From positions 1 through 64,000 of IMG/VR virus record IMGVR_UViG_3300044680_000280: a stretch of 64,000 nucleotides of DNA; one strand, 5' to 3'. The position numbers and the translations under genes are program-made. Below are positions 6,693 to 51,912 of the stretch, piece by piece (the stretch's first letter is position 1; every line of letters begins with the position of its first letter). The notes beneath the pieces are model-generated. The model saw only the letters and a list, made by a program, of their open reading frames with translations. It had not been told where the DNA came from and searched no databases.

Positions 6693-8117
6693 TTATCGGT
6701 CGGTAAGATCTTCCAATGGCTGAGGTGGAACACCGTGTAGCTGATTGGGAGCCTCCTCGTCGACCCAGAGAGAGGTCAACATCGATTTCCCGCGTTTTTT
6801 ATCCATGTAGTACATGGCTTGTTGGGGAACTTCGAAAGCTGCTCTGATACGTTGGCTGTAAGGCCCGTACCCAATGAGCGACCCATTGACTACGGCTCTA
6901 CCATAGTCAAGTAGGGAGTGATGGTGCCCTATGTTGTGGACGTCGGCCCTTTTGACAAGGTCCCACATTGGTAGGGACTTGAGCAACGGAATGCCGAGTC
7001 CACCGACCCCACCCATGTACTTCACATCGTCACCGTGGTGGAAGTGAAGAGTCCAATCGTAGACCTGAACGTACTGGTGTGGGGAGTTGGTGATTTCGAA
7101 GTGAATCCGTTTCTCATTGCGGAACTCATCCGCCAGGGAGTGGTACATGAGCCACTCAAAACTATTTGCAAATCCAGAGGAGATTCGAGGCTTTGCAGTC
7201 GTCCTTCCGTGATTACCGTAAGAACACGGAACCTCGATATGGGCAAAGTCGAGGCGATTCAGAAGGGTCCAAATCCCATCACGAATTCTAGGGAGTAGCC
7301 ATCGAATCGTTTCCGTGGGCGAGAGGGCATTCGTTTCAACCAGTTCCTCGTGAATGTAGCCGGTCATTAAATCGCCACCAAGCCAGAGCACCAGATCGTT
7401 GATGGTGAGTCGCTTGCTCGCACGATGGTGCTCGATGTTCCAAATGATTCCATCAAACAAGCGGCGAATTCTATGATCGGCGATATCGAGGTTATACTCG
7501 TTACGATAGGCAACGCTCTCCGGTTCAACCGGCTCTTCAACGTGCCAATCGGAACATAGGGCTACGGCTGTCATTTCTCTCACACCCGAGTTCTTCTCTC
7601 GAGGCATGATACGGGGCGGCGCCTTGAAGCTATGTACAACGTCGATGAACGACTGTCGAGCGCGGGCCTCACGTAGCTGGTCGACGAGCTGTCGGATCTG
7701 CCTCTTGTCCCGAGAGATTTCTTCTTGCTGTTCCCTTCGCTCCACCGGGTCGAAGTCGGGCTCGTCATCATCGCCCTCGTAGGCCTTCTTTTCTTCTTTA
7801 TCATCGAGGAGCTCTTCCTCGGAAGGGCTGAGTTCCTTGCAGTAGGAGGAGGGGGCGTTCAGCTTGTTTCGCTGAAACGCGGCTCTCAGTGCCCCTTGGG
7901 TGACCGGGTGGTCAACGTTGTCCTGGATCTCCTTCAGGGCTTCCCTGAATTGGTAGATGGGGTACTTCGACAAGATGAGTTTGGCAACACGAAGATCACT
8001 CTCACTCCATACTAAGGACATTGGCGCTCCGTCTTGGGGTTTGGTCACGTGCGCGTGAGCGCGCACGTACGTAGATGAAACTGTCGTATTGATTAGAGGT
8101 TCATCGACGAATTTCAC
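6693..8117 (-). CDS. calcineurin-like metallophosphoesterase with N-terminal helical/coiled-coil region
   Basis: SDWH, GGDLMTG, GNHG, HHGD and GHHH metal-binding motifs. Confidence 0.8.
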   Translation of the reverse strand: MKFVDEPLINTTVSSTYVRAHAHVTKPQDGAPMSLVWSESDLRVAKLILSKYPIYQFREALKEIQDNVDHPVTQGALRAAFQRNKLNAPSSYCKELSPSEEELLDDKEEKKAYEGDDDEPDFDPVERREQQEEISRDKRQIRQLVDQLREARARQSFIDVVHSFKAPPRIMPREKNSGVREMTAVALCSDWHVEEPVEPESVAYRNEYNLDIADHRIRRLFDGIIWNIEHHRASKRLTINDLVLWLGGDLMTGYIHEELVETNALSPTETIRWLLPRIRDGIWTLLNRLDFAHIEVPCSYGNHGRTTAKPRISSGFANSFEWLMYHSLADEFRNEKRIHFEITNSPHQYVQVYDWTLHFHHGDDVKYMGGVGGLGIPLLKSLPMWDLVKRADVHNIGHHHSLLDYGRAVVNGSLIGYGPYSQRIRAAFEVPQQAMYYMDKKRGKSMLTSLWVDEEAPNQLHGVPPQPLEDLTDR

Positions 8118-8123: not shown

Positions 8124-8162
8124 AAATGAAAAAGGGCTCGTCGGATGTTCCGACGAGCCCTT
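8124..8162 (-). terminator. intrinsic terminator downstream of the glycosyltransferase
   Basis: Perfect 14-bp inverted repeat aagggctcgtcgga-tgt-tccgacgagccctt (8132-8162), running into a T tract on the minus strand. Confidence 0.75.
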
Positions 8163-8190: not shown

Positions 8191-9270
8191 TTACGTGGGG
8201 TTACTGTCCAGATATTTCAGCCATTTGCAGAGACCCTCGGAAACGTACTTTTCGAGGGCGCAGAGACCCTCGGCGGCGCTGCCGGTGTCCCAGAGGAGAG
8301 CCGAGCCGACTCGAGCGATGTCATCGGCATCGTCCGGATCTGCCTGCCATGATTCGGGAACCCATTCGATGGCGGGACCTACGACGGCCGGAACTCCTTC
8401 GGAAACCGCGTCGGCCGTCACTATGTTAAAAGTTTCTGTGAATGAGGCTTGAACGACGAGGTCCATATGGGAGACGGTCAGTCGGAACTGGCTCCACTCT
8501 TCCCATGGAACCTGAACAATCTTCGCCCAGCGAAGATTGTTGAACATGTTGTTTAGCGCAAGCATGATGCTCTTGCTCTGAGGGTTCTCCGTGCGACCCG
8601 AATTCACGTAAAATTCGAGGTCGGAACCGCGTCGATTCGCCATCATGAGAGCGGCAGCGGCCGAGGTCGTGTGATTCTTCAACAGACGATGGGCGCCGAA
8701 GCAGCCGATGCGAAGGCTCCGATGATCATGGCTGACACCGGGCTTGCGGTTCTCGCGATCGACGTTGTAGAGATTCGGCAAGAGCAAGCATCGGCTCTTG
8801 TACGTACGATCGATGAACTGCTTGAGACGCAGCGTATTTGCCGAGACGGTGAGATTGAGTTGGACTTCTTGCAGGAGGAGCATATCCCGGAGAATCTTGA
8901 TGGCGCCCGGCTCGACTTGGAGGAAGCCGATCTGACTGTGGCAACGGACGACGAAGTGGACGCTGGGGAACTCCGTGAGAAGCGTGGACATGTCCGGAGC
9001 TTTGATCCAGAAGGCCTCGACGATCGCGTGAGTTGGCATGTACTTCTGGAGTGCCTTGCGAACGGAGTCGATGTTCCAGACGGGCGCGATATCGCATCGG
9101 ACCCCCGCCTTGCGGAGGACCTTGGCCGTGTGAAGGGCGTTGACACCGAGACCGCGATGGCACTTGCCGCCTTCGCTGTTGTAATCCTCGTAGTCTCCAC
9201 CGTAGGACTTGAAGTCGCGGTAGAAGATGACGACGTGAGCCGTTTCCTTGGTGGGGGTGAGGTAGTGCAT
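8191..9270 (-). CDS. GT-B glycosyltransferase (GT4-like)
   Basis: DLVVQASFTETFNIVTADAVSEGVPAVV matches the GT4 ExF...E/DA...G.P.V signature; GCFGAHRLLKN nucleotide-sugar loop. Confidence 0.8.
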   Translation of the reverse strand: MHYLTPTKETAHVVIFYRDFKSYGGDYEDYNSEGGKCHRGLGVNALHTAKVLRKAGVRCDIAPVWNIDSVRKALQKYMPTHAIVEAFWIKAPDMSTLLTEFPSVHFVVRCHSQIGFLQVEPGAIKILRDMLLLQEVQLNLTVSANTLRLKQFIDRTYKSRCLLLPNLYNVDRENRKPGVSHDHRSLRIGCFGAHRLLKNHTTSAAAALMMANRRGSDLEFYVNSGRTENPQSKSIMLALNNMFNNLRWAKIVQVPWEEWSQFRLTVSHMDLVVQASFTETFNIVTADAVSEGVPAVVGPAIEWVPESWQADPDDADDIARVGSALLWDTGSAAEGLCALEKYVSEGLCKWLKYLDSNPT

Positions 9271-9369: not shown

Positions 9370-10104
9370 CTATCCGTGGAGTTTCTGAAACCGACTCGCA
9401 ACCTTCACGGTCAGCGGATCCAAAGAGGCTGTTTTCTCCAGGGTTCCATTGTCGAGGTAGGCGGCTTCCATTCCCGGATCAAGGCAATTAAATCGGATCA
9501 TGTCGGCCTCGAGTCCTACCTCTTCCGCAGTGGCTTCGAGTGCCTTGAGGAACTCCCCTTGAAGGAGCTTCGTTCTTGATCGTTTTTGCCTTGGGAGTTC
9601 GGGACCCTCAGATCGAACCTGAGACAACTTGGAAGACATGATTCTATTGGCGTTGAACCCTCGGATATCACTCATATTGAGCTTGAATCCGCCCAGGTAT
9701 TCGTTCACCATGTCCGCCGTCACGCGACCCGTGTCGTGTGCAAAGAGCTCGTCGTCCACATCCTCGACCGCTTCGTAGGCATCCGCCAAAGCTCTGACGA
9801 TCGATGCGTTGGTGATGGGCTTGCGTTTCCCCTTGGCTCGGAAGTACGCCTCTCGATCATCGAGCTGGACGTTCTTCTTCCGCCAAGAGAAGACGGGGTC
9901 CTCGCTCGTCTCAGCCATGAGTCCGACCGCCAACGCGGTGAGAAAACGATTGGGATCGCTCGAGCGTAGGTCTCGCTTGACTTTGGCTTGAAGCGCTTCC
10001 ATGGAGGATCGGACACGGCTCAGTCGTCGACTGCGAGACCGAAGCTGTCGCTCCTCACTGACAAGCCCTTTCGACCGGGCGCGGGCAACAACAAGGAACC
10101 TCAT
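9370..10104 (-). CDS. type IB topoisomerase-like protein, catalytically degenerate
   Basis: KVKRDLRSSDP...TALAVGLM, VTADMVNEYLGGF, SDIRGFNAN and LEATAEEVG resemble the Topo IB core; the catalytic His/Tyr positions read L/C. Confidence 0.6.
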   Translation of the reverse strand: MRFLVVARARSKGLVSEERQLRSRSRRLSRVRSSMEALQAKVKRDLRSSDPNRFLTALAVGLMAETSEDPVFSWRKKNVQLDDREAYFRAKGKRKPITNASIVRALADAYEAVEDVDDELFAHDTGRVTADMVNEYLGGFKLNMSDIRGFNANRIMSSKLSQVRSEGPELPRQKRSRTKLLQGEFLKALEATAEEVGLEADMIRFNCLDPGMEAAYLDNGTLEKTASLDPLTVKVASRFQKLHG

Positions 10105-11495
10105 TCGGGCTCTTCTGTGGGTACGGGTTCAGGCGCCTCGGGAGCTTTACCCGTCTTGACAACACTCTTGAGCCACTCGGACGGTTCTGGTTTTAGATGA
10201 CCAAGAATGTAGGTGGTCATCATCTCTGCAAAATACTCCATGTGGTTCTTACGGGCATAGTTCGTGGGGACCCAATCATGTAGATGGGTTTTGTAGTCAC
10301 TCCGTCCTTCGCCACTCTTTATGAGGGAGGACAACTCTACGTAAACCGTATGCCTTTCTTCCTCAACCTTTTTGAGTTCCGCCTCTTTGGCTTCGTCTTT
10401 ACCAGCATAGGTAAGGGAATCGACGGATTCAGGCACAATTAAGGGTCCAGGGCCTCGTCGGTAGATTTGCTGACGCTTGATATAAGCCTCTGGGGCGTCA
10501 ATGACCTCCACGTTGACAGTGCGACTATCCGCCTTACCAACGATGCGACCCTTCACATGGTACTGCACACCATTGACCCACGTATCGTATTCAAATACCT
10601 GTCCCTTGCGTGGCAATGGCTTTCGCTTGTTTTGCTCCTCACTCAGTCGGGAATACGCTTCATTCAGAGCCTTCATTTTTCGGTTCAGAATGTCAACCTT
10701 GTTGCTTTTACCGGTCGACTTCTGACGAACAGCCCACATGTGCTTACTGATGATTGCTGAGTTATTAATTCCACCTGGCACCACCTTATCGTGGCAGTAG
10801 TGTCCAAGCTCATGAATGACCGTATGGATAAGTTTAGGATCCTCGTAGGACTTCGGTGCAAACTGAATGGTAGGAGGCACACTACCCATTGTGTAAAGTG
10901 CGCCGGCATGGGAAGCACCTCGCCCGCTTAGTACAGACGAAATATCGTGAACGATGGGGACACCAGCAGCGGCGTACATACGCTCCGCTTCCTCGAGCAA
11001 AGCACCCAGCTTGTCCACGTGTTCTTCGTGCTGCTTCAGATAAATCACCTTGAATCGACCAAACTTCTTCTCGAGAACTACGGACGCCGCATAGCGCTCA
11101 ACGACTCGTTCGGCAGCCGTCTTCTTCTCTTCTTCTTCGGGGTCGGGCGGGTCGGGGTCGTGCCAGATCTTGTAGAGACCCATGATCTTGTTCTTTTTGC
11201 GGCCTTGTGGGACTGGACGAATCTCAATCATCGGGTGTCCACGATCATCGGCCCAAATGCGCTCGATGATGCCGTGCTTGTTCTTGTACTTCCCGAATAC
11301 AATTTCGTCCCCGGGGGCGAAGAACCCCCTGGCGATCAAAACTCGTGCGGCAACTCTGGCTGAGATTGCGTCGGTCGGAGCGACGTCGTCGTAGATTACG
11401 TCCTCAAGACCGTCCTCCCCCGAGCATGCGCTCATGGGTTGGCTACGGCACCACTCGAGGGCGGCGATGCCCCACTCAGGATCAATATCGTTCAT
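10101..11495 (-). CDS. multidomain protein: small beta-barrel module plus HExxH metallopeptidase
   Basis: VIHELGHYCH and NYARKNHMEYFAE; internal motifs RVAARVLIA and KKTAAERVVERYAAS; ATG 11495 overlaps the upstream stop. Confidence 0.7.
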   Translation of the reverse strand: MNDIDPEWGIAALEWCRSQPMSACSGEDGLEDVIYDDVAPTDAISARVAARVLIARGFFAPGDEIVFGKYKNKHGIIERIWADDRGHPMIEIRPVPQGRKKNKIMGLYKIWHDPDPPDPEEEEKKTAAERVVERYAASVVLEKKFGRFKVIYLKQHEEHVDKLGALLEEAERMYAAAGVPIVHDISSVLSGRGASHAGALYTMGSVPPTIQFAPKSYEDPKLIHTVIHELGHYCHDKVVPGGINNSAIISKHMWAVRQKSTGKSNKVDILNRKMKALNEAYSRLSEEQNKRKPLPRKGQVFEYDTWVNGVQYHVKGRIVGKADSRTVNVEVIDAPEAYIKRQQIYRRGPGPLIVPESVDSLTYAGKDEAKEAELKKVEEERHTVYVELSSLIKSGEGRSDYKTHLHDWVPTNYARKNHMEYFAEMMTTYILGHLKPEPSEWLKSVVKTGKAPEAPEPVPTEEPE

Positions 11496-12913
11496 CCTTG
11501 ATTCCATAGGGTGGTGGCTTCAGCACAATCGACATCAGGACAGAGATAAATGGCGTAGGCTGCCAAATCGTGAAGCCAGAACTTGCCCTCATCATGATTG
11601 TCGTACAGGTGGCACACAGCATCCCCGCCCGGCTTCTCCTTGATGGTAATAGCTAGCCTGGCATCCTTACCACATTTGAAGCACTTCGTAGTGGGGTCAA
11701 ACTCGGCCTGGTACGTCAGCCCCGTACCAGCGGGACCGTACCCGACATCCAAACCGCCATGCTCGGCGGCATAGCGGGCAGCAACTTTGAGGGTGAGCTT
11801 ACTCATAGTGGCTTTCTTTCGGATCAAGATGCGGTCACCACCACTATTCATCAATGCAATTTCAGGGTCCCCAAGACGGTTGGGGTGTTGGGCATAAAGA
11901 GAAACGGGGCGGTCTCCAATGATGAGCTTAACAGTAACAGTCCTATCCCCTGTCCGTTGATATACGTCGGCTACGGTAGCGCTCGAGTGAGCTGGAATGT
12001 TTAGTCCCCGAGAACCCTTCTCAACGAGCACACGATCTCTAGGCTTGAGAGAGAAGTCACCACGAATCTTGTTTGGGTCCTCATCCTGCTCAAAATGCTT
12101 TTCGTACTTTTTCTTTCGGAGTAGGATTTGGTAGGAGGTGGGCACGGGTTTCCCTGGCCGCAGGCGAATTCCAATCTTAGCTGTTTCGATCGCATCGTCC
12201 TTCGTCGGGGCGTCATTGACTATGACTCGATCATCATTGAGAATGACCTGCCACTTACCATCGGTCAGCCAAACCCGCACATCATGATCCAGAATGGAGC
12301 CCTGGTATAATTGCGGATTTATTTCTCGCAGGTCCACATCCTTCTTGGGTCGCTTCTCAACGTAATTTCTAGCCTCTTCCGTAGAGATTGGGTCCATCTG
12401 ATGATTTGAGTGCACGACGAATAGGTCGACATCCTCAAGTCCGACAATCATCGAGCACCCTAGTCCAAAACAGCAAGCGGAGTCTTCCATGACCCCGGAT
12501 TGATGAGGTGGCCCGTTCGGGTCAAAGGGCACCTTTGGATTCAAATGGTGAAATCGGACGCCCATTGCGTCCAAACGAGCGAGGAAGAGATCGTCTCCGT
12601 ACCGTTTTCCCCTGAGTTTATTCCCTATTTCAATGACTTCCGTGATGTTGTGCCCCCAAGACGCTCCGTGAGTTCGTTCCGCCTTGGCTGAGTAAGTCCC
12701 GCCCGTAATCCTTCCCGTTCGCAGAATACGACTCAACTCCTCCCCATCAAAAATGCGATACATTTTCACCGGAGACTCAAACGTACCGACGATTTGATCT
12801 GTCATCGATGGGAATTGCTGACGAGCTTTATTCGTGGCGTCACGATCTATCGTAATTTTGATAGCATTCGCTGACTTCCACCTGCTCAAAACTCGAAATT
12901 CGATGCGATCCAC
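11492..12913 (-). CDS. multidomain hypothetical protein with RV-x-x-R leader and C-terminal Cys-rich module
   Basis: Probable GTG start 12913 (MDRIEFRVLSRWKSA); internal MSKLTLKVAARYAA; C-terminal CFKC...CPDVDC. Confidence 0.65.
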   Translation of the reverse strand: MDRIEFRVLSRWKSANAIKITIDRDATNKARQQFPSMTDQIVGTFESPVKMYRIFDGEELSRILRTGRITGGTYSAKAERTHGASWGHNITEVIEIGNKLRGKRYGDDLFLARLDAMGVRFHHLNPKVPFDPNGPPHQSGVMEDSACCFGLGCSMIVGLEDVDLFVVHSNHQMDPISTEEARNYVEKRPKKDVDLREINPQLYQGSILDHDVRVWLTDGKWQVILNDDRVIVNDAPTKDDAIETAKIGIRLRPGKPVPTSYQILLRKKKYEKHFEQDEDPNKIRGDFSLKPRDRVLVEKGSRGLNIPAHSSATVADVYQRTGDRTVTVKLIIGDRPVSLYAQHPNRLGDPEIALMNSGGDRILIRKKATMSKLTLKVAARYAAEHGGLDVGYGPAGTGLTYQAEFDPTTKCFKCGKDARLAITIKEKPGGDAVCHLYDNHDEGKFWLHDLAAYAIYLCPDVDCAEATTLWNQG

Positions 12914-12924
12914 ACCTACCCAAC

Positions 12925-13638
12925 CTATCGAAAGAGCACCGTTCCAGGGGGGAGAATAAGGGTAATGAGCCAATCAACGGCAGCTTCTCGATCGGCAAAC
13001 TGCGGAAAGAAACGGGAGATACTCCCTACGTTAACTGTCTGCTCATCGAAGAGACGCACCGGGCACCCCGACTCGCACTGCCATGATGGTATCGTTTCCT
13101 TCCCATCGGCATCAGCGTGCCCCCTCCAGGCACCCGTACGAGTCGTTGCAGTGCCCTTCTGGGAGAACTGAGACGAGCTACCCCCTGGACCGTTCGGGTA
13201 TCCCCTGTGACCGTCCACTCTAGTATAACCCGGCTTGCATTCTGGGGAGTGAACAAAGATTATATTTGGTGGCCATCTACCAAGGGGAGACGGTCCAGCA
13301 AATTCGGACTCCGTGCGGAAGTGACCAAGTTGTCCCCCATTCATAATGCCTGAAAACTTGTCGGACGTACGCACCGTCATCTTCACCGGCTCGTTGTGTC
13401 TGATCCTACATGCGTCGATTTGAAGTGCCCCGGTACCAGTCAATATGGCCTGATCGATGACCGTAGGCGACGTGAGAGTCTTCCTACAAAGCAAAATGCA
13501 TTCAGTCGTGGGCCCAGGCTTCAACAGATGGATAGTATCATGAATATGGTGACCGTCCTTCCGCACTTGAATCGCACTGTCTTCGTCGCAATTGTAGACG
13601 AAAAAGTAAGCACCAGCGGAGAGGTCTAAGGGAGCCAT
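12925..13638 (-). CDS. DNA methyltransferase-related fragment lacking catalytic motifs
   Basis: GTGALQIDACRI, GRWPPNII and SISRFF resemble the central segment of phage N4/N6 MTases; no DPPY and no FxGxG. Confidence 0.6.
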   Translation of the reverse strand: MAPLDLSAGAYFFVYNCDEDSAIQVRKDGHHIHDTIHLLKPGPTTECILLCRKTLTSPTVIDQAILTGTGALQIDACRIRHNEPVKMTVRTSDKFSGIMNGGQLGHFRTESEFAGPSPLGRWPPNIIFVHSPECKPGYTRVDGHRGYPNGPGGSSSQFSQKGTATTRTGAWRGHADADGKETIPSWQCESGCPVRLFDEQTVNVGSISRFFPQFADREAAVDWLITLILPPGTVLFR

Positions 13639-21541: not shown

Positions 21542-22371
21542 GGTATCACCACAAGACCCTTCGTGGAGTTCGACTTCTTCGGGGACAAGGACTTGTCCGA
21601 GGCATAACAGTAGCCACAAGATAGGGTGCACGATTCGTTGAAAGTGAACGGGTCGACCATGATGGCACAGCCACATGATTCGGATTGGGGTTTTGGCTCA
21701 CCCTCGCAGGGAACACATACGCCAGCGGATAGATTTTGCTGGGCCCCCAGGCCATCCAGGGAGTCCTTGTAAACGTTGCAGAGGCGAACCCTTATACGGT
21801 AGGCATCCGCAATCTGAGCCAATTCTCGCATGATTTGGAGACATTCCGTGGCGCTTCGGGTCTCTGGAATCATGTCGTTTGGTTGTAAAAAGGACAAATA
21901 GACGGAGTTCGTCTTCCCTGTCATCCGAGAGGCAATGGACTCGAAACGTTGGTACAAGCTTCGAACCGAGCTTAGAATCGGAACGGGCGAGAACCGCCAT
22001 GAAAGGTTCTCTCTGCCCACAAGATCCGAGAGGTTCGAAGCCCACTGCGTCGCGGTTTCGATGTTGGGCGCTCCCCGTTCCACTTCCTCCCAACCCGTAA
22101 TCGTCACGTGAACCTTGACCTTGTAGGCGGACAGTAAAGCGTAATCGGCGACCAAGTTCTTCGGGACTTTGGTCCAAAAAACCAGGCTGTGCGTTTCTTC
22201 TGGCGCTAAAGACCACCAGTCGGGAACGCCCGTGCGAACGTCGAATGCTTGCATTTTCCCAGAGAGCAGACTCGCCCGAAACCAATCCCATTTAGCTCCC
22301 GGGACATCGGTCCACCGCGAAAGGCTGTAAGGTACAACCTCAGCTCTACCAGAACGAAGAATCGGGGTCAT
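21538..22371 (-). CDS. DUF1848-like (radical-SAM-related) protein
   Basis: SLSRWTDVP, VFWTKVP, WRFSPV, CGC...DPF..NESCTLSCGYCYA. Confidence 0.75.
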   Translation of the reverse strand: MTPILRSGRAEVVPYSLSRWTDVPGAKWDWFRASLLSGKMQAFDVRTGVPDWWSLAPEETHSLVFWTKVPKNLVADYALLSAYKVKVHVTITGWEEVERGAPNIETATQWASNLSDLVGRENLSWRFSPVPILSSVRSLYQRFESIASRMTGKTNSVYLSFLQPNDMIPETRSATECLQIMRELAQIADAYRIRVRLCNVYKDSLDGLGAQQNLSAGVCVPCEGEPKPQSESCGCAIMVDPFTFNESCTLSCGYCYASDKSLSPKKSNSTKGLVVIP

Positions 22372-23249
22372 CCCTCAGAAGATACACCAGCGGCGTCTTC
22401 GAGGGCTTCCCTAATCGTATCCGGATCCAAATCTTTGAGTGCTTTCGCCGAAATGGCGGCGATGAGAGCCTGAAAAACCTCATCCTGAGTGGGGGGCCGG
22501 TCGTCTTTCGACGCGAGGCGCTCCATGAGCTTTGAGACCAGCTCGACCGAGTGGTGACCGATCTCCCCAAACTCGTGTAGAGTGGGTAGGTGCTGTAGGT
22601 GCTTCGTGACCGCTTTGACCGCGATCTTCTTTGCGGTAGAGCTAACGAACGAGCTCATCACGCCCTTCGTGATGGCAACGGCGCCCGCTCCAAGACCGAA
22701 CCCCGCCCCTAAGGCCCCTGAAACTGCCGCAACCGTACAGTGGATGGCCACTTCCCGTATGGCGTGCTTTTGCTTCTTGGAGACTTCCTTGCCGGTCATC
22801 CAAGCATGGATGCCCTCGCCCGCCTCCTTGAACTCCTTGACCTCATGTTTGGCTACATTGTAGGCACTCTCGACGTATTTCATCGGGGCGCTCAGAATCG
22901 ACTTGTGCGCCTTGAGTAGAGTTTCTCGACGATGATCCTCATCATCAACGAATTTTTTGACGGTCGACGGGGTCTTGTGGAGGAACTCCTGGGCCTTCGA
23001 GGACAGACTCTTTGCCAGGTCCTTCCAAGTCAACTTAGGCCCGGCACCGTGTTCGTGCTCATCGTGCTCGACACCGTGACCTCCGTCCGTCTTCTTTTCA
23101 GAAATCTCCCCCGGCTTCTTGACCGTATGATTTTTCGGGTCCGCCTTGGGATGTTCGTGCAGGTAGTCCTTCAGCGCCTTTGGAGTCGGAAACTCGAAGG
23201 CGAGCTGGTAACGAGCCGCCACACGCAGACTCAACACGTCCCTACGCAT
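22368..23249 (-). CDS. hypothetical protein with RVAARY leader
   Basis: MRRDVLSLRVAARYQLA; Gly/Ala hydrophobic segment VAAVSGALGAGFGLGAGAVA. Confidence 0.75.
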   Translation of the reverse strand: MRRDVLSLRVAARYQLAFEFPTPKALKDYLHEHPKADPKNHTVKKPGEISEKKTDGGHGVEHDEHEHGAGPKLTWKDLAKSLSSKAQEFLHKTPSTVKKFVDDEDHRRETLLKAHKSILSAPMKYVESAYNVAKHEVKEFKEAGEGIHAWMTGKEVSKKQKHAIREVAIHCTVAAVSGALGAGFGLGAGAVAITKGVMSSFVSSTAKKIAVKAVTKHLQHLPTLHEFGEIGHHSVELVSKLMERLASKDDRPPTQDEVFQALIAAISAKALKDLDPDTIREALEDAAGVSSEG

Positions 23250-23250
23250 T

Positions 23251-24465
23251 TCAGACCTTGGTGTACTTTTTAGCGAAATGCATGAGGTGGTCGTTGACGA
23301 ACTCTTCAGTGTCGATGTTCCTGTAATCGGACGACCACATGGAACGGGCCTCTCCGAAGTTGTTCACCTTAGGGCCGGCCGAGTAGTAAATGGCCTGCGG
23401 CTTGAACCAGAATCGGAAGTCTCCGTGGGGCGACACGGCGTACGGGATTTTCAGGTGATCGGTAACCCTCCAGCCCTTGGCCTTAAGTGATGCGAAAATC
23501 GCGTCCTGAGCCTGCTTGAAGGTCTTCTTTGCTTTGACCCGAGGCTTCTTCTCCCTCAGGGGATACGCGTCTACCTTCGGTCCTGGCTTCAGTCCCACTT
23601 GACGCATATAGTCCAAATTGATGATATCAGGTAGCTCATCGCAAAGGTCGAAGATGTCCTTGAAAACGTTCGTAACCTCGTGAGACTCAGAGGCGACCCG
23701 AGCGAAAAGCTGGCGCTGACCCTGAAGAAGCCTCTCGAGCTCGGTCAGATAGGTGCGAACCGAGTGAAGAGCTTCCTTGACCTCTTCACCCTCGAGCGTG
23801 GTGGCGTGTGAGAATCCTCGTAGCGCATGCCCCTCGATCTCTTTTGCTCGATGTTGCTCTTTGGCGGGAAGGTCGTTGACGAAGGGTTCTAGGCTCATGA
23901 TGAGATCACGAAACGTATCCGTGGCCTGAGGACCGGTCCTAATGTTCCAGGTCTTTGCCTTTTTCCCTTTTTTCTTATCCTCTAGCTGAAGCGTAACAAT
24001 GGCTTGTTTGGCAATCCGCTCGGGATCCATACTATGCTCGTCCCGAAGTTCGCGAAGGTCACCGACAAGACGATAGTACGTCGACGTAAACGAGGCTTCA
24101 CGTCCCATCGCCAATCGCACGGCGGCAACCGCTTCGGGGTCCTTATCGGGGAATCGAGACGAAGCCTCTGGGGCTGGGGGCGACAAATCGTCCGTCTTCA
24201 AGAGCTCGTTTTGGACTTGGTCGGCTTCCTTTTTTCCGCCCGGCTTGTCACCCTTGTTCTTCATCGACCAAGCAAGTGCCCACGGGTTATCGATCTCATC
24301 GTGTTTTTTCATCTTTTTGACGGTATTCTCCCACCCAGGAGGGGCTACCGCGAGGTGTTCGTCAAGAAGCGGATCTTGCGCCATGGGCCCGGGACGGCTG
24401 ATTGACGCCTCTTCCTCTTGAGTTTGGGCGATTCGTTGAGCAACACGAAGAGCTAGCTTGTCCAT
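23251..24465 (-). CDS. modular hypothetical protein with RVAQR leader
   Basis: MDKLALRVAQRIAQ; internal RLAMGREAS, RIAKQA, RVAS. Confidence 0.75.
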   Translation of the reverse strand: MDKLALRVAQRIAQTQEEEASISRPGPMAQDPLLDEHLAVAPPGWENTVKKMKKHDEIDNPWALAWSMKNKGDKPGGKKEADQVQNELLKTDDLSPPAPEASSRFPDKDPEAVAAVRLAMGREASFTSTYYRLVGDLRELRDEHSMDPERIAKQAIVTLQLEDKKKGKKAKTWNIRTGPQATDTFRDLIMSLEPFVNDLPAKEQHRAKEIEGHALRGFSHATTLEGEEVKEALHSVRTYLTELERLLQGQRQLFARVASESHEVTNVFKDIFDLCDELPDIINLDYMRQVGLKPGPKVDAYPLREKKPRVKAKKTFKQAQDAIFASLKAKGWRVTDHLKIPYAVSPHGDFRFWFKPQAIYYSAGPKVNNFGEARSMWSSDYRNIDTEEFVNDHLMHFAKKYTKV

Positions 24466-24469
24466 GGGT

Positions 24470-24475
24470 TACACC
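24470..24475 (-). promoter_or_regulatory. GGTGTA upstream element
   Basis: 4 nt before ATG 24465. Confidence 0.45.
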
Positions 24476-24493
24476 ACCCAATCAATAAGTGGA

Positions 24494-25213
24494 CTAGAGA
24501 AGTAACCCGGCCTCATCCAGAGCCATATACACGGCTTTCAAAATCTTGGCCTTACTTTGAGGGTTCATGTAGTCCCGAACCTTCTTCCAAGTTTCACTGA
24601 GGTCCACGACGGCTTCTACGAATTGGTGAGGTCTCCCCTTGTACTGCTTTCGCAGGAGGTAGCGGTTCGCGATGTCGAGGCATTGCGAAACAATCTGCTG
24701 CATGTACGCCCGCACCTCATGGGCTTGGTTGAAGTATGCGTTGCGCTCTTCTGGGCTCTCCTTAGGGTCCACAATCTCGTGGGGGAGAAAGCGACCTTCG
24801 GCCGCATGGGTTAACTCGTGAATGAGCACCTTGAAAATATCCGCTGAGACTAGGGGCTGATTTTCAGGATCCGCAAAGTCCCCGAATGTTTTCGAGCCGT
24901 TAATGTGCACCCATATTTCTCGTTTGACAACCGAGTACATCCCACCCACGGTAAAGGAAGTCGACTTGCTAAGAGTGCTTTCGAATAGAACCGGAATGGT
25001 GATGAAGTCGCCCCCGATTACCCAGACGCTGGTTTCCTGATTGTCGAAGATTTTGGCATGGCGACCGACAACCTGTTCCGACGGGAAATGAGCCGTGTAT
25101 TTTGTGATGTAGTGGGCTATACGGTCGGAATCTCTCTTAATCGCCCCGTGGTCGAGAGGAATTGGCCGGGCTTGAATAAACCTGGCAGCGACTCGGAGCG
25201 TGAGAACGTCCAC
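24494..25213 (-). CDS. HExxH metallopeptidase-like protein with RVAARF leader
   Basis: GTG start MDVLTLRVAARFIQA; LIHELTHAAE; YFNQAHEVRAY. Confidence 0.7.
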   Translation of the reverse strand: MDVLTLRVAARFIQARPIPLDHGAIKRDSDRIAHYITKYTAHFPSEQVVGRHAKIFDNQETSVWVIGGDFITIPVLFESTLSKSTSFTVGGMYSVVKREIWVHINGSKTFGDFADPENQPLVSADIFKVLIHELTHAAEGRFLPHEIVDPKESPEERNAYFNQAHEVRAYMQQIVSQCLDIANRYLLRKQYKGRPHQFVEAVVDLSETWKKVRDYMNPQSKAKILKAVYMALDEAGLLL

Positions 25214-25236: not shown

Positions 25237-26523
25237 CTAACCGTGAGTCAACAAACGTTCGGTGCGGGTGACGACGGCTTCCCCCCTCGCGCAAATGGAC
25301 TCAGCGGTAATCCGCAATCCGGTCGCATCCCCTTCGCTGGGAAGGTTGTACGCATAAGGTGCGAGGGTCTCCTCCACGATGGATCGCAACGACCGTGCGC
25401 CCGTCGGCCGCTTCTTTGCCTCCCGGCCGATCGCCAACAACGCTTCGTTGTCGAACTCGAGCGCAATGTCATCCATAGCGAACAGGGCCTTGTATTGCTT
25501 CACGATTGCGTTTTCCGGTTCCGTGAGGACTCGAACCATATCCTCCTCGCTAAGCTCGTACGTTGAGGTGAGGATCGGCAGACGCCCTAAAAGCTCTGGG
25601 ATGTAACCGAACTCAAGGACGTCGTCCGGAACAACCGTTCGGTATGCTTCGTCTAAGGAGAGCCTCTTTTTTTCGTTGGATTGGGAACCGAAACCCAGTC
25701 GGGACGCCTTGTTTACACGACGGTCAACGATTTCCTCGATGCCAGCAAAAGACCCAGCAAAGACGAATAAGATGTTCGTTGTGTCGATGACGTCGACATT
25801 GGAGCGAACTGTTCCGTCGGCGCCCACAGTCGTCACGGACGCGTTCTTTCCCATTCCTCGGGTGACGGGCACCTTGCACCCCTCAATGATGCGTAGGAGC
25901 CCCTGCTGGACGCCCTCGCCCGTGATGTCTCGATAACCCGACGCGGAACGCCCGCTCTTGCGAGCTATCTTGTCCGCCTCGTCACAAAGAATGATCCCCC
26001 ACTCGGCGCGGGCCACGTCTCCGCTCGCGTCCTGAATGAGACCCCGAAGCATGTCGTCGGCGTCATCCCCGACGTACCCCTGTTGCGTCAAACGAGAGCA
26101 GTCCTGGACGTAGAACGGAACCTTGAGGAGTCGGCTAATGGCGCGAAACGTTTCGGTCTTGCCGGATCCTGTCGGTCCGAGAACGAGCATGTTCGATTTT
26201 TGGATCGCTACACCCCCGGACTTGAGCATCTTCGATGCTTCGCGCCTCTTGAAGTGGTGGTAAACTGCCGTTGCGACGGTCGTCTTGAGCCGATCCTGGG
26301 AGATGATGTGCCGATCAAGGTACGCCTTGATTTCCTTAGGTTTACCCAGGGCAACCTCGCCCCTCTTTTCCCTCGTGATTTCCTTCAAAAAGATCTCCGA
26401 GGACCCCTTAGCACAATCGGCACAAATGTAGGTGCCTTCCTCTTGTCCCTTGATGAGCCGTCCGTCGGGGACCTCGTTCTTTGCGTGGAGGCAGAAAGAA
26501 CAATGCTGGTCGGTGGTGGGCAT
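25237..26523 (-). CDS. clpX: ATP-dependent Clp protease ATP-binding subunit ClpX
   Basis: C4 zinc finger CSFC...CADC, GPTGSGKT, LTQQGYVGDD, DEADKIARKS, GEGVQQGLL, LGF loop, PELLGRLP, TGARSLRSI. Confidence 0.95.
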   Translation of the reverse strand: MPTTDQHCSFCLHAKNEVPDGRLIKGQEEGTYICADCAKGSSEIFLKEITREKRGEVALGKPKEIKAYLDRHIISQDRLKTTVATAVYHHFKRREASKMLKSGGVAIQKSNMLVLGPTGSGKTETFRAISRLLKVPFYVQDCSRLTQQGYVGDDADDMLRGLIQDASGDVARAEWGIILCDEADKIARKSGRSASGYRDITGEGVQQGLLRIIEGCKVPVTRGMGKNASVTTVGADGTVRSNVDVIDTTNILFVFAGSFAGIEEIVDRRVNKASRLGFGSQSNEKKRLSLDEAYRTVVPDDVLEFGYIPELLGRLPILTSTYELSEEDMVRVLTEPENAIVKQYKALFAMDDIALEFDNEALLAIGREAKKRPTGARSLRSIVEETLAPYAYNLPSEGDATGLRITAESICARGEAVVTRTERLLTHG

Positions 26524-26570: not shown

Positions 26571-26855
26571 TCACTCGATGCCCTCGCCCGCAAGAGCCTT
26601 GCTCTTGATCTCGCTCGCGAGCTGCTTTTTCAGAGCCTCAACCTCCTCCGAAACCATCACTGACTTAGCTAGGTGTTTAGCTCTGTACTCTTCTCCATCC
26701 ATGATGGCCCGAAAGTAAGCCTTGGCGATGATGGTCTCGAAGGAATCGTCGGGGAGTTTGGCAACGAGACGCGCCGCCGCCTGGCGAACCTCGGGTCCGC
26801 TCAGGATGGTGAGCCGCTCGGCAACTCGGGCTGCAACTCGATCGGCGATGCTCAC
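26571..26855 (-). CDS. small protein with RVAARVAER leader
   Basis: GTG 26855 overlaps the nitrilase TGA; MSIADRVAARVAERL. Confidence 0.6.
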   Translation of the reverse strand: MSIADRVAARVAERLTILSGPEVRQAAARLVAKLPDDSFETIIAKAYFRAIMDGEEYRAKHLAKSVMVSEEVEALKKQLASEIKSKALAGEGIE

Positions 26856-27625
26856 TTCTTCAGCTCCGCGTACACGATGCAATCTTCGGACCATTTGAGT
26901 CCGTCACAATGAACTTTACCACTTTTTTCGATGACGCAAACGCCACCCTCACCAAAATCGTTGTTTGCTTCCTTTCCCCACACGTTGGAGACAGCGAGTG
27001 CCGTTTGATTCTCTTCCACAAAGTCCATCCATCCGTTGGCAGGCACACCCCCGTCACCCCAGGCACTAACCATTAGAACCAGATCCGCATCCCCAGGTTC
27101 ATAAAAGCTGTTCCATTTGTCGTCTTTTTTGTCCCTTACGTCACGGCAAATAAGCAGACCAATCTTCCACTGTTCCCCATCTATTGTCGTGCGAATTACG
27201 GGAGGGTTGCTTTGGCCCCGACCGGCCCAAATGTAATCGTTACCAAAAGGGCAAATCTTTCGATAACTTTCATGGTATCCGTCCGGACCAATGAAGACCT
27301 GCGAATTGTAGAGCTTGTTGGTACCCAAATCGACCTCAACGAAGCCGAAAGTAATGGTCACCTGAAGATTGCGAGAGATTGACAATGCTCGACCCATCAT
27401 TGTACACGGGCTTACCCCGTTCCAATCGTCTAACCACTGGGGACTCTCTGCGAACGGGCGAGCCTCCTCCTCTGACATGAAAGAGTACCCGGTAGTCGCC
27501 AACTCAGGAGCGCATATTACTTTTGCCCCGTTCCTCGCTGCCTCAACAATCAGTGCGGACAACCGCTCGATGTTGCCCTTCTTATCCTTGAACGTAGGCT
27601 TGAATTGTATTACGGCGACACGCAT
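26852..27625 (-). CDS. carbon-nitrogen hydrolase (nitrilase superfamily)
   Basis: MRVAVIQF, PELATTGY (E), YRK (K), LICRD (C): intact catalytic triad. Confidence 0.9.
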   Translation of the reverse strand: MRVAVIQFKPTFKDKKGNIERLSALIVEAARNGAKVICAPELATTGYSFMSEEEARPFAESPQWLDDWNGVSPCTMMGRALSISRNLQVTITFGFVEVDLGTNKLYNSQVFIGPDGYHESYRKICPFGNDYIWAGRGQSNPPVIRTTIDGEQWKIGLLICRDVRDKKDDKWNSFYEPGDADLVLMVSAWGDGGVPANGWMDFVEENQTALAVSNVWGKEANNDFGEGGVCVIEKSGKVHCDGLKWSEDCIVYAELKK

Positions 27626-46586: not shown

Positions 46587-46781
46587 TCAGCTCTGAGGAC
46601 GTAAAGGGATATACCCTCGTTCCCACTGGTCGAGTCGACTCAATCTATCTTGAAGTCGAGAGATCTGCTCAGTGGAAAGAACGTTTCCGATCATCACACC
46701 ACGAATTTGCTCCCGCATGCGAGCGGCTGCCTTGGAACGAACATCAGCAGGAATGTCGAGATATGTCAGGTGACCAATCAC
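46587..46781 (-). CDS. small hypothetical protein
   Basis: ATGA coupling to the 1450-aa gene. Confidence 0.55.
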   Translation of the reverse strand: MIGHLTYLDIPADVRSKAAARMREQIRGVMIGNVLSTEQISRLQDRLSRLDQWERGYIPLRPQS

Positions 46782-51130: not shown

Positions 51131-51166
51131 TTACATTCCTCGCACTTGTCGGGGTTATCAGTAAGT

Positions 51167-51173
51167 TACACCG
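51167..51173 (-). promoter_or_regulatory. CGGTGTA upstream element
   Basis: 36 nt before ATG 51130. Confidence 0.55.
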
Positions 51174-51176
51174 GAG

Positions 51177-51845: not shown

Positions 51846-51903
51846 GTATACTCACTCGGGGTTGCAGGTGACGGACTGCACTCCGTTTCGTAGATTTTTA
51901 AGC

Positions 51904-51910
51904 TACACCG
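51904..51910 (-). promoter_or_regulatory. CGGTGTA upstream element
   Basis: 58 nt before ATG 51845. Confidence 0.55.
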
Positions 51911-51912
51911 GA

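What the first reader, a model, noticed from the sequence alone, without database searches (positions are those of the whole stretch)
9370..10104. Catalytically dead type IB topoisomerase homologue carrying a C-terminal tag
SEEN: the Topo IB-like scaffold (KVKRDLRSSDP..TALAVGLM; VTADMVNEYL; SDIRGFNAN; LEATAEEVG) is present. The segment that normally carries the first catalytic Arg (RVG) appears deleted (ETSEDPVFSW). The VGH...Y region reads VGLEADMIRFNCL, with no catalytic His/Asn and no Tyr nucleophile. The protein ends KTASLDPLTVKVASRF. ESTABLISHED: Topo IB needs the R-K-R-H/N-Y pentad. INFERENCE: an enzyme repurposed as a DNA clamp or binding protein, possibly a packaged nucleoid/DNA-protecting factor or a decoy.
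Basis: partly seen in the sequence, partly recalled or inferred. Interest (0 to 1): 0.6.

Follow-up and report, generated by a model that had tools for sequence, protein, structure and literature searches.

The report
Dead topoisomerase IB paralogue, huge phage
A roughly 450-kb phage from peat carries, next to its working type IB topoisomerase, a second selected copy that has lost the residues needed to cut DNA and ends in a short helical tag shared by about twenty other proteins of the phage.

Summary
Window 9370..10104 (-) encodes a 244-aa protein with the Topo IB catalytic-domain fold (AF2 pLDDT 87; variola TopIB Z 17.1, Deinococcus TopIB Z 16.7).

Against 19 active relatives carrying R-K-R-H/N-Y, it and its 11 sister sequences lack the Arg-I segment. 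His is Leu198 and the Tyr nucleophile is Cys207. Lys (K93) and Arg-II (R148) remain.

It is not decaying. The clade is one branch (100/100), dN is 0.2-0.47 against saturated dS, pI is 9.5-10, and the sequence is identical in three peat samples.

In two relatives that intact gene lies directly upstream with an ATGA overlap. Twenty other huge-phage genomes with this family hold only the active type.

The "C-terminal tag" is real but not private. An RVAxR[F/Y] helix stands at N-termini, C-termini or domain junctions of about 18 proteins here (24 hits against 6.4 expected), and is enriched more than tenfold across 22 related genomes.

Most likely it is a non-cleaving, nucleic-acid-binding pseudoenzyme docked to a shared partner through that helix. 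The partner is unknown. The phage's own ClpX is the best lead. The "DNA clamp" and "packaged decoy" ideas are untested.

The parts
9370..10104 (-). Gene of the 244-aa catalytically disabled Topo IB paralogue (P0001); stop codon at 9370-9372
   Evidence: ORF and translation. Homologues. AF2 model pLDDT 87. Topo IB fold at Z 16.7-17.1. Hit of 197 bits to the active-clade profile.
10101..10104 (-). ATGA overlap of this gene's start with the stop of the upstream gene (translational coupling)
   Evidence: Sequence read. The same 4-base overlap with whatever gene lies upstream is seen in L003, L040, L041, L042 and L043 (coordinates).
10066..10101 (-). Residues 2-13: degenerate N-terminal copy of the RVAxR[F/Y] helix
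   Evidence: In alignment A1 it falls in the columns of the RVAARYKxKK motif that precedes the active enzymes. Helix 2-11 in the model. R8 is invariant in the dead clade.
9898..9903 (-). Codons E68-D69: junction where the Arg-I segment (ERVGN...GVT in active relatives) is missing
   Evidence: Pentad table: gap in all 12 dead-clade rows, Arg in all 19 active rows. The active segment aligns with FRVGSD of Deinococcus TopIB and IRFGKM of variola TopIB.
9826..9828 (-). K93, in the column of the catalytic Lys (variola K167); the hairpin after it is 5 residues shorter
9661..9663 (-). R148 = Arg-II (variola R223), invariant in all 31 aligned sequences
9511..9513 (-). L198 in the column of the catalytic His/Asn
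   Evidence: L/I/V in 11 of 12 dead-clade rows, H or N in 19 of 19 active rows.
9484..9486 (-). C207 (TGC) in the column of the Tyr nucleophile
   Evidence: dead clade Y 7, F 4, C 1; active clade Y 19 of 19. Codon read. Identical in peat contigs.
9418..9444 (-). Residues 221-229: flexible linker before the tag
   Evidence: pLDDT 54 for residues 221-230, below 50 for 225-229. Variable and gapped in the alignment.
9388..9414 (-).
   Evidence: Conserved at the C-terminus of the dead clade and of many active members. Motif HMM hit E 1.3e-5. Helix 230-243 in the model.
10101..11507 (-). Upstream gene, 468 aa: small GKYKNK domain plus zincin-like HELGH domain, with two internal copies of the motif. 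The zincin domain is fused to the active Topo IB in relative L041.
   Evidence: 71% identity to L041 residues 287-605. Zincin lead. No Pfam hit.
11492..12973 (-). Next gene upstream, 493 aa: conserved module of unknown family, motif at residue 396, then a Cys-rich C-terminal domain
   Evidence: No Pfam hit and no atlas hit.
8191..9270 (-). Downstream gene, 359 aa, GT4-like glycosyltransferase; directly follows the dead Topo IB gene in 5 of 7 loci
   Evidence: Pfam GT4-conflict E 5.5e-4, below cut-off. 65-80% identity across loci.
8132..8162 (-). Terminator-like hairpin (14-bp stem, T-run) that closes this gene row
25237..26523 (-). Phage ClpX with its zinc-binding N-domain; candidate receptor of the motif (a lead only)
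   Evidence: NCBIfam ClpX equivalog 411 bits against a cut-off of 359. zf-C4_ClpX. GYVG and LGF loops. No ClpP in the genome.
22368..25213 (-). Three genes directly downstream of clpX (293, 404 and 239 aa), each beginning with the motif
   Evidence: The orthologues in G002 keep the motif.

Best explanation
The gene encodes a pseudoenzyme: a duplicate of the Topo IB that this group of huge (about 400-570 kb) phages carries.

After the duplication the copy lost several parts:
- the short N-terminal beta-hairpin;
- the 12-14-residue segment holding Arg-I;
- five residues of the Lys hairpin;
- the general-acid His;
- in several lineages independently, the Tyr nucleophile (Cys207 here, Phe in four sisters).

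It can therefore no longer form the covalent 3'-phosphotyrosyl intermediate. It is nevertheless kept by purifying selection. It stays strongly basic and retains the phosphate-contacting Lys and Arg-II. It keeps, on a flexible linker, the C-terminal RVAxR[F/Y] helix that the active enzyme and about 18 other proteins of this phage also carry.

Inferred mechanism: it binds nucleic acid, or a Topo IB partner, without cutting. The shared helix docks it to the same still unidentified partner as the active Topo IB and the neighbouring zincin-like, unknown-family and GT4-like modules. It thus works as a non-catalytic binding or scaffolding module of that set.

Shown: homology, fold, loss of catalytic residues, selection, paralogy, motif enrichment. 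Inferred: nucleic-acid binding, docking, and any role in the phage cycle.
For: Homology and fold:
- The family profile hits Deinococcus TopIB at E 5.7e-12 and variola TopIB at 2.5e-10.
- AF2 model pLDDT 87.
- Foldseek's top 22 hits are all Topo IB.
- VIA-align gives Z 17.1 and 16.7, against about 11.8 for Cre.

Loss of the pentad. Arg-I is deleted in 12 of 12 rows, His is L/I/V in 11 of 12, and Tyr is Y7/F4/C1. All 19 active relatives have R-K-R-H/N-Y.

Single origin: the dead/active split has 100/100 support, and the active paralogues of the same genomes fall in the active clade.

Selection:
- dN 0.20-0.47 against dS above 1.1; omega 0.12-0.34 where computable. The active paralogues give 0.10-0.125.
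- 47 columns are invariant within the clade.
- No stops or frameshifts in 12 sequences.

Basic character is kept: pI 9.5-10.0.

Intact paralogue: P0033 lies in the same phage at G001:122011-122976, scores 100 bits to PF01028 and has the full pentad.

Tandem arrangement: the active gene lies directly upstream with ATGA coupling in L041 and L043.

Co-occurrence: active and dead forms share contig lengths in three further cases.

Motif:
- 9 strict hits against 0.44 expected.
- 24 against 6.4 genome-wide, and 8 against 0.7 within the first 25 residues.
- Synonymous codons vary freely, so the constraint is on the peptide.
- 58 against 3-5 control hits across 22 genomes.
Against: No assay was possible.
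- Nucleic-acid binding is inferred from charge and two retained residues only. The loss of the N-terminal hairpin and of the Arg-I segment removes the main DNA-reading elements.
- Seven sister sequences still have the Tyr, and P0012 keeps both His and Tyr, so residual chemistry in some members cannot be excluded.
- dS is saturated, so omega values are rough.
- The docking partner of the helix is unknown.
- The active Topo IB of LR745208 keeps its N-terminal motif in a genome where the motif is not enriched. For the topoisomerases the helix could therefore be partly structural.
- The predicted heterodimer with the active paralogue got only weak support.
Confidence: 0.6

Rival explanations
1. 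Partner or regulator of the active Topo IB. The dead copy pairs with the active paralogue, or competes for its DNA sites. It would tune relaxation or trap or target the enzyme, as many pseudoenzymes do with their active relatives.
For: The two genes are adjacent and translationally coupled in L041 and L043. They co-occur in every genome where the contig is long enough to tell. Complex prediction of P0033 with P0001 gave a median score of 0.39 against a best control of 0.00. The mark was reached by 51 of 78 solved complexes and 2 of 108 mismatches. Run agreement was at least 52% of contacts and partner pLDDT at least 71. The tool's verdict was 'weak support'.
Against: The tool states that a pass at 0.60 or under is more often wrong than right unless the pair was likely beforehand. 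In the window's own phage the two genes are 112 kb apart. Topo IB enzymes are known as monomers on DNA (established knowledge). In most loci the gene upstream of the dead copy is not the topoisomerase.
Confidence: 0.15
2. SspB-like adaptor or client of the phage's own ClpX. The RVAxR[F/Y] peptide on its flexible linker would dock to the zinc-binding N-domain of the phage ClpX. This would tether the dead Topo IB, and whatever it holds, to the unfoldase. The other motif-bearing proteins would be clients or adaptors too.
For: - The E. coli SspB tail that binds the ClpX N-domain is RGGRPALRVVK (PMC3983244). Many phage copies read A-L-R-V-A-A-R.
- Like SspB, the dead Topo IB has a folded domain, a disordered linker and a terminal peptide.
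- The phage encodes a full ClpX with the zinc finger and GYVG and LGF loops, but no ClpP.
- clpX is flanked by four motif-bearing genes, here and in G002.
- Across 22 genomes motif density is 0.78 per 100 kb with a ClpX zinc finger and 0.26 without (one-sided Mann-Whitney p 0.007).
Against: The likeness to the SspB tail is four or five residues, which is easily chance. From my own knowledge, the SspB peptide binds as an extended strand, whereas the motif is modelled as a helix. The correlation is not corrected for relatedness; G020 and G021 are near-duplicates and five genomes carry the contrast. Genomes without the zinc finger still hold a few copies.
Confidence: 0.13
3. One reading: a virion-packaged protein injected with the DNA, acting as a DNA-protecting factor or decoy. 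The shared helix would be a capsid-targeting signal, as in the T4 internal proteins and Alt.
For: - Motif-bearing proteins include effector-like domains typical of packaged polyvalent proteins. One is ART-PolyVal PF18760 at E 3e-9; there are also zincin-like peptidase domains (PMC5512222).
- The modules are shuffled and fused differently between relatives, with the motif at the junctions.
- In other huge phages the Topo IB domain sits inside ORFs of 600-1800 aa.
- Most copies of the motif lie at the extreme N-terminus, as the T4 targeting sequence does.
- Poxviruses package their Topo IB (established knowledge).
Against: The gene sits in a replication and DNA-metabolism module: PolA, DnaB-like, SNF2, ThyA, methylases, SbcD-like. 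No head, portal or prohead-protease gene was identified nearby. No conserved cleavage site follows the motif. No virion proteome exists, because no cultured phage holds the family.
Confidence: 0.1
4. Still an enzyme: a Topo IB or recombinase-like protein that cuts DNA with a non-canonical set of residues.
For: K93 and R148 are kept. Seven sisters keep Tyr, and P0012 keeps both His and Tyr. H123 and D124 are newly conserved in the dead clade.
Against: Arg-I is deleted in all 12 rows. The nucleophile column is Phe in four sisters and Cys here; Tyr to Phe is the classic inactivating change. By parsimony on the tree the Tyr was lost about five separate times, which shows it is no longer needed. 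No other Tyr lies in the active-site helix of the query.
Confidence: 0.02

Closest known systems
Type IB topoisomerases with solved structures (variola/vaccinia virus, Deinococcus radiodurans)
   Same: Same catalytic-domain fold: Z 17.1 over 210 residues and Z 16.7 over 199 residues at rmsd 3.2. The Lys and Arg-II columns, the DIRGF/DFRTW box and the C-terminal helices align.
   Different: No N-terminal domain. The Arg-I segment is deleted, the His is Leu and the Tyr is Cys. An added C-terminal linker and helix are not found in those enzymes.
The huge-phage Topo IB family itself: P0033 in this phage, and more than 535 database proteins at E <= 1e-20. 'Phage-specific topoisomerase I' has been reported for jumbo phages such as phiRSL1, Lu11 and PaBG (PMC7824862).
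   Same: Direct paralogue: 38% identity, E 2e-36. Same RVAxR[F/Y] helices at the ends. Same genomes.
   Different: The active family keeps the full pentad and a TVYEYS hairpin. The dead clade is a narrow offshoot: 12 sequences found, and only 2 of 22 surveyed genomes. No cultured phage in the collection holds either form at E <= 1e-5. Kinship to the phiRSL1-type enzymes was not tested.
Polyvalent proteins of phages and conjugative elements (Iyer et al. 2017, PMC5512222)
   Same: Effector-like domains (ART, zincin peptidase, DNA-acting domains) are combined in variable order. There are fusions and fissions between relatives.
   Different: Here most modules are separate genes, each with its own short helix. 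No MuF, portal or packaging gene is linked, and delivery with the DNA is not shown.
SspB adaptor and its ClpX-binding tail (PMC3983244)
   Same: A folded domain, a flexible linker and a short terminal peptide with an L-R-V core. A ClpX with the zinc-binding N-domain is encoded by the phage.
   Different: No sequence or fold kinship to SspB. The motif is longer, ends in an aromatic residue, is modelled as a helix, and is mostly N-terminal in the other proteins.
Capsid-targeting sequence of T4 internal proteins and Alt; encapsulation peptides of microcompartments and encapsulins (recalled, not tested here)
   Same: A short amphipathic helix at a terminus, shared by unrelated cargo proteins.
   Different: No shell, scaffold or protease partner was identified, and no cleavage site follows the motif.

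Membership tests
Type IB topoisomerase (PF01028), as a homologous family | Catalytic-domain fold | tested here: met
   AF2 pLDDT 87. Foldseek's top 22 hits are all Topo IB, best E 2.5e-7. VIA-align Z 16.7-17.1 against about 11.8 for tyrosine recombinases.
Type IB topoisomerase (PF01028), as a homologous family | Significant sequence match to family models | tested here: inconclusive
   The query alone scores 15.4 bits, below the Pfam cut-off of 23.7, and gets no PDB hit by phmmer. It scores 197 bits (E 2.4e-59) against the profile of active relatives. The joint profile hits solved Topo IB at E 5.7e-12. Homology is therefore secure, but the curated threshold is not reached.
Type IB topoisomerase, as an enzyme | Catalytic pentad Arg-Lys-Arg-His/Asn-Tyr | tested here: not met
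   Arg-I deleted, K93 kept, R148 kept, His is L198, Tyr is C207.
Type IB topoisomerase, as an enzyme | N-terminal domain plus catalytic domain that together clamp duplex DNA | tested here: not met
   The model aligns only with the catalytic domain (Deinococcus residues 88-316). The short TVYEYS hairpin of the active paralogues is deleted.
Type IB topoisomerase, as an enzyme | Relaxation of supercoils through a covalent 3'-phosphotyrosyl intermediate | not testable with these tools
   Needs purified protein.
Tyrosine recombinase / integrase | R-H-R-Y catalytic set and a closer fold match than to Topo IB | tested here: not met
   Recombinases score Z 8-12, below every Topo IB. There is no Pfam integrase hit, and the catalytic Tyr and first Arg are absent.
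Pseudoenzyme (selected, inactive paralogue) | Active paralogue present; catalytic residues lost; purifying selection | tested here: met
Polyvalent / injected effector proteins (PMC5512222) | Variable multi-domain combinations of conflict-type domains | tested here: inconclusive
   Module shuffling and a Topo IB-zincin fusion. One motif-bearing protein has an ART-PolyVal domain. Topo IB sits inside 600-1800-aa ORFs elsewhere. Most neighbours have no recognised domain.
Polyvalent / injected effector proteins (PMC5512222) | Packaging in the virion and delivery with the DNA | not testable with these tools
   No cultured relative.
SspB-type ClpX adaptor | A ClpX with a zinc-binding N-domain is available | tested here: met
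SspB-type ClpX adaptor | The terminal peptide binds the ClpX N-domain | not tested
   There is only a four- to five-residue likeness to RGGRPALRVVK and a genome-level correlation.

The most novel reading that the evidence does not exclude
The RVAxR[F/Y] helix is a lineage-wide docking tag. Through it a phage-encoded ClpX, working with host ClpP or alone, would recognise a whole set of phage proteins. The dead Topo IB would then be an SspB-like adaptor: a former enzyme whose DNA- or Topo-IB-binding body holds a cargo while its tail tethers that cargo to the unfoldase. That would be a phage-built substrate-selection system for a hijacked protease, and a new use of the Topo IB fold.
Probability: 0.12. 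Interest if true: 0.8.

Novelty: new variant of a known kind. Interest (0 to 1): 0.58.

Why it matters
Topo IB is a textbook enzyme. My three literature searches aimed at this found no report of a naturally selected, catalytically dead paralogue in a virus.

The pair is well suited to asking what a topoisomerase fold does once it stops cutting. The active and dead copies lie in one genome and are tandem in relatives. The losses came in steps: Arg-I first, then His, then repeated loss of Tyr.

The tag matters more widely. A six-residue core shared by about twenty otherwise unrelated proteins, and enriched more than tenfold in 20 of 22 related huge-phage genomes, points to an unrecognised sorting or docking system in a group of phages with no cultured member. 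A peptide pull-down or an in-silico screen of about 600 proteins would make it directly testable.

Tried and rejected
- Single-sequence searches of the query gave nothing useful: PDB phmmer, 0 hits at E <= 10; PHROGs, only E > 0.2; NCBIfam, a spurious IS630 hit at 13.6 bits.
- PF01028 was not found in the 156-kb record G000. The intact paralogue lies outside that record and appeared only in the overlapping 406-kb record G001.
- The whole contigs behind L001 and L003 could not be searched because they are not held. Co-occurrence there rests on matching contig lengths. No active partner was seen for P0006 among the 120 listed rows.
- G002 (76% complete) shows only the dead copy.
- I rejected the idea that the motif reflects a repeated DNA element, such as a recombination linker or a translation signal. 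Codons at synonymous sites differ freely among 13 copies.
- I rejected decay or pseudogene status.
- Complex prediction of the active and dead paralogues gave score 0.39 against a best control of 0.00. The mark was reached by 51 of 78 solved complexes and 2 of 108 mismatches, with run agreement of at least 52% of contacts and partner pLDDT of at least 71. The verdict was 'weak support', so it is not used as evidence of binding.
- The protein atlas gave no usable hit for the 493-aa neighbour and only sub-0.9 zincin leads for the 468-aa neighbour.
- No RNA run holds the stretch, so expression could not be checked. The reads step showed identity only.
- The large representative search was not run.
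Full report
WHAT IS THERE

Window 9370..10104 on the minus strand is an open frame of 244 codons.

The ATG at 10104 overlaps the TGA of the upstream gene as ATGA. The same four-base overlap with whatever gene lies upstream recurs in five related loci (coordinates).

A database gene call of 210 aa begins at Met35 (P0002). Residues 1-34 are conserved among homologues, with R8, R26, R27 and L28 invariant. The long form is therefore the better model.

The stretch is letter-identical in contigs from three peat metagenome runs, two of which may be the source. The unusual codons are thus not a one-off assembly error.

THE GENOME

- The window is the first 64 kb of a 406,734-bp IMG/VR record (G001). 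That record overlaps the 156-kb record G000 without a mismatch. Together they give 453,746 bp.
- The same proteins stand on a 463,523-bp contig in the protein collection.
- GC content is 55%.
- The surroundings are a replication and DNA-metabolism module:
  - family A DNA polymerase (35960..38812);
  - DnaB-like helicase;
  - SNF2 helicase;
  - thymidylate-synthase homologue;
  - two DNA methylases;
  - SbcD-like exonuclease (6693..8117);
  - DHH-like protein;
  - ClpX.
- This is a huge phage from peat. No cultured phage in the collection holds a relative of the gene. The only hit is the uncultured 485-kb record LR745208.

IS IT TOPO IB-LIKE?

By itself the protein is weak against Pfam Topoisom_I (15.4 bits, cut-off 23.7) and finds nothing in the PDB by sequence.

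The word search found 31 relatives. Twelve, including the query, are about 240-250 aa and 44-72% identical. Nineteen are about 40% identical, carry PF01028, and some are named DNA topoisomerase by their sources.

- A profile of all 31 hits Deinococcus radiodurans TopIB at E 5.7e-12 and variola TopIB at 2.5e-10, with the catalytic boxes in register.
- The AF2 model built on this alignment has mean pLDDT 87.
- Foldseek's best 22 PDB matches are all Topo IB.
- VIA-align gives Z 17.1 (variola, 210 residues) and 16.7 (Deinococcus, 199 residues, rmsd 3.2). Cre and Xer recombinases follow at Z 8-12.

Homology and fold are secure. The match covers only the catalytic domain.

IS IT DEAD?

Pentad columns read from the alignment:

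| Position | 19 active relatives | 12 dead-clade sequences | Query |
|---|---|---|---|
| Arg-I | Arg, in ERVGN | gap in all 12 (12-14-residue deletion) | deleted |
| Lys | Lys, in GKSGVKH | K in 8, R in 4; next five residues missing | K93 |
| Arg-II | Arg, in DIRGF | Arg in all 12 | R148 |
| His/Asn | H or N, in VGH | L, I or V in 11; His only in P0012 | L198 |
| Tyr | Tyr, nine residues after the His | Tyr in 7, Phe in 4, Cys in 1 | C207 |

Variola has the same His-to-Tyr spacing (H265 to Y274).

- The short TVYEYS hairpin that the active phage enzymes keep from the N-terminal domain is also deleted.
- No other Tyr lies in the query's active-site helix.
- On the family tree the Tyr losses are scattered: P0011, P0005, P0003, P0010 and the query. 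My parsimony reading of the tree needs about five separate losses, though some inner branches are weak.
- Repeated Tyr-to-Phe changes are what one expects once the nucleophile no longer matters.
- The order of events is readable. The Arg-I segment went first (all 12), then His (11 of 12), then Tyr (five times).

IS IT DECAYING?

No.

- The 12 sequences form one side of a branch with 100/100 support. The active paralogues from the same genomes fall on the other side. The duplication is therefore old and both copies have been kept.
- Pairwise dN is 0.20-0.47 while dS is above 1.1 or not computable. Omega is 0.12-0.34 where computable, against 0.10-0.125 for the active paralogues of the same genomes. 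The synonymous distances are saturated, so these ratios are rough. Still, dN is several-fold below dS in every pair where dS could be computed.
- Length is constant and there are no stops. Forty-seven columns are invariant within the clade, some of them new to it, such as H123.
- The proteins remain strongly basic: pI 9.5-10.0 and net charge +7 to +14. That is at least as basic as the active enzymes.

THE INTACT PARALOGUE

- G000 has none. G001 has one at 122011..122976 on the minus strand, 112 kb from the dead copy.
- It is 321 aa, scores 100 bits to PF01028, matches the active profile at E 1.1e-133, and has the full pentad.
- The two paralogues are 38% identical.
- In two relatives the active gene lies immediately upstream of the dead one with an ATGA overlap (L041 and L043).
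- In three further cases an active and a dead protein share the same longest contig: 569,965, 483,777 and 13,704 bp.
- Conversely, among 22 huge-phage genomes that hold this Topo IB family, only G001 and G002 have a dead-clade copy (415 and 385 bits).
- The other 20 genomes have a single active-type copy. Nine of the IMG/VR records searched are at least 94% complete.
- The dead copy is thus a lineage-specific addition, not a replacement.

THE TAG

The C-terminal peptide is conserved in the dead clade and in many active members. A related copy precedes the active enzymes, sometimes twice.

Within this phage:
- A strict pattern for the core ([KR][VIL][AV]x[RK][FY], with a limited set at x) finds 9 copies in the 156-kb record, against 0.44 expected from shuffled proteins and a maximum of 3 in 500 shuffles.
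- In the merged 454-kb genome a looser core gives 24 against 6.4 +/- 2.4, and 8 against 0.7 within the first 25 residues.
- G002, a relative with 63% GC, gives 15 against 4.4, and 7 against 0.4 N-terminally.
- With weaker copies, about 18 proteins carry the motif. Most have it directly after the initiator Met. Others have it between domains or at the C-terminus.

Level of constraint:
- Thirteen copies use different synonymous codons, so the constraint is on the peptide and not on a DNA element.

Across genomes:
- DNA that encodes RVAAR[FY] occurs 58 times in the 22 genomes. The backwards control gives 5 and the reversed peptide gives 3.
- In LR745208 the motif is not enriched: 8 against 5.1.

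In the model:
- The C-terminal copy is a helix (230-243, pLDDT about 70). It follows a linker with pLDDT below 50.

THE NEIGHBOURHOOD

The dead gene is the last but one in a co-directional row: a 493-aa gene, a 468-aa gene, the dead Topo IB, a GT4-like gene, and then a strong terminator-like hairpin at 8162..8132.

- The GT4-like gene follows directly in 5 of 7 loci at 65-80% identity.
- Upstream, the same few modules are cut and joined differently in each relative, with the motif at each junction. The modules are:
  - a zincin-like HELGH domain;
  - a second zincin-like domain;
  - a small GKYKNK domain;
  - a conserved domain of unknown family;
  - a Cys-rich domain;
  - the active Topo IB.
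- In L041 the active Topo IB is fused to the zincin domain, which is a separate gene in the window.
- Elsewhere in the genome, motif-bearing proteins include an ART-PolyVal domain (E 3e-9) and weaker DRAT-like, zincin and DnaJ-like matches.
- In other huge phages the Topo IB domain lies inside ORFs of 600-1800 aa.
- This resembles the polyvalent-protein theme of Iyer et al. (PMC5512222). Here, however, most modules are separate genes and no packaging gene is linked.

A LEAD FOR THE RECEPTOR

- The phage encodes a full ClpX at 25237..26523. It passes both NCBIfam ClpX equivalog cut-offs, has the zinc-finger N-domain, and has GYVG and LGF loops. The genome has no ClpP.
- Three genes directly downstream and one directly upstream of clpX begin with the motif. 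This arrangement is kept in G002.
- The E. coli adaptor SspB binds the ClpX N-domain through its tail RGGRPALRVVK (PMC3983244). Many phage copies read A-L-R-V-A-A-R.
- Motif density is three times higher in the 17 genomes with a ClpX zinc finger than in the 5 without (one-sided p 0.007). This is not corrected for relatedness.
- It is a lead, not a result.

WHAT IT MOST LIKELY DOES

Shown:
- It is a selected, catalytically disabled paralogue of the phage's own Topo IB.
- It carries a docking-type peptide shared with the active enzyme and many other proteins.

Inferred:
- It still binds nucleic-acid backbone, or a partner of Topo IB. The grounds are its charge, K93 and R148.
- It is brought to the same place as the other tagged proteins.

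It cannot clamp DNA as Topo IB does, because the N-terminal domain and the Arg-I segment are gone.

Rivals, in order of my odds:
1. A regulator or partner of the active enzyme. The evidence is tandem coupling in relatives. Complex prediction gave 0.39 against a best control of 0.00. The mark was reached by 51 of 78 solved complexes and 2 of 108 mismatches, with run agreement of at least 52% of contacts and partner pLDDT of at least 71. The verdict was weak support.
2. An SspB-like ClpX adaptor or client.
4. A still-active enzyme, which is very unlikely.

NOVELTY

Active Topo IB in jumbo phages is known (PMC7824862). My three literature searches aimed at this found no report of a natural dead paralogue or of this motif.

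I file it as a new variant of a known kind: a Topo IB pseudoenzyme. The shared tag is the part most likely to lead somewhere new.

Noticed in passing
whole window and G001; copies at 22368..25213, 26571..26894, 44010..45323, 10101..12973 (all -): A short helix motif, hxxLxxRVAxR[F/Y], stands at the N-terminus, C-terminus or a domain junction of about 18 proteins of this phage. Counts are 24 against 6.4 expected, and 8 against 0.7 within the first 25 residues. DNA coding RVAAR[FY] is enriched 58 against 3-5 across 22 related huge-phage genomes. Codons vary, so the constraint is on the peptide.
   Followed up: partly
window 25237..26523 (-): The phage encodes a full ClpX that passes the NCBIfam equivalog cut-offs, with a zinc-finger N-domain and GYVG and LGF loops. 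No ClpP was found in 454 kb. Motif-bearing genes flank it on both sides, here and in G002. The motif shares an L-R-V core with the SspB tail that binds the ClpX N-domain.
   Followed up: partly
G001:122011-122976 (-), outside the window; neighbour at G001:123000-123644 (-): The intact Topo IB paralogue (321 aa, full pentad) has two N-terminal motif copies. The gene next to it (214 aa, no Pfam family) also begins with the motif.
   Followed up: yes
window 10101..12973 (-) compared with L003, L040, L041, L042, L043: The same five or six domains are fused and split differently in each related phage, always with the motif at the joints. L041 has one 612-aa protein of active Topo IB plus the zincin-like domain. 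L003 has a 749-aa protein with two zincin-like domains.
   Followed up: partly
window 8191..9270 (-) and 8132..8162 (-): A GT4-like glycosyltransferase gene (Pfam GT4-conflict, below cut-off) follows the dead Topo IB gene in 5 of 7 loci at 65-80% identity, so it is better conserved than the dead Topo IB itself. A 14-bp-stem terminator-like hairpin closes the row. A thymidylate-synthase-family gene lies at 29544..30500, so a role in DNA modification is conceivable. This was not examined.
   Followed up: no
window 46778..63961 (-): Five large consecutive genes (1450, 797, 1021, 657 and 1302 aa; a 222-aa and a 250-aa gene lie among them) have no Pfam family at E <= 0.001.
   Followed up: no
G001:214971-215861 (-) (L026:14974-15861): A 296-aa protein has an ART-PolyVal ADP-ribosyltransferase domain (E 3e-9, above cut-off). 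Two tandem copies of the motif precede the domain.
   Followed up: no
G007, G008, G017, G020, G021 (IMG/VR records reached through L095, L096, L114, L152, L153): In other huge phages the active-type Topo IB domain lies inside open frames of 1171 to 1808 aa. In those phages the enzyme is one domain of a giant multi-domain protein.
   Followed up: no
L003:13674-14030 (-) and G002:67611-67700 (+): A stand-alone protein of about 120 aa with a ClpX-type zinc finger (listed with Pfam Acb5) lies 3 kb from the dead Topo IB gene in the G002/L003 phage. No counterpart was found in the window's phage.
   Followed up: no
records G000, G001, G002: IMG/VR labels these 156-407-kb records 'provirus'. The two records of the window's phage overlap perfectly and extend each other to 454 kb. 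No integrase or host flank was looked for.
   Followed up: no
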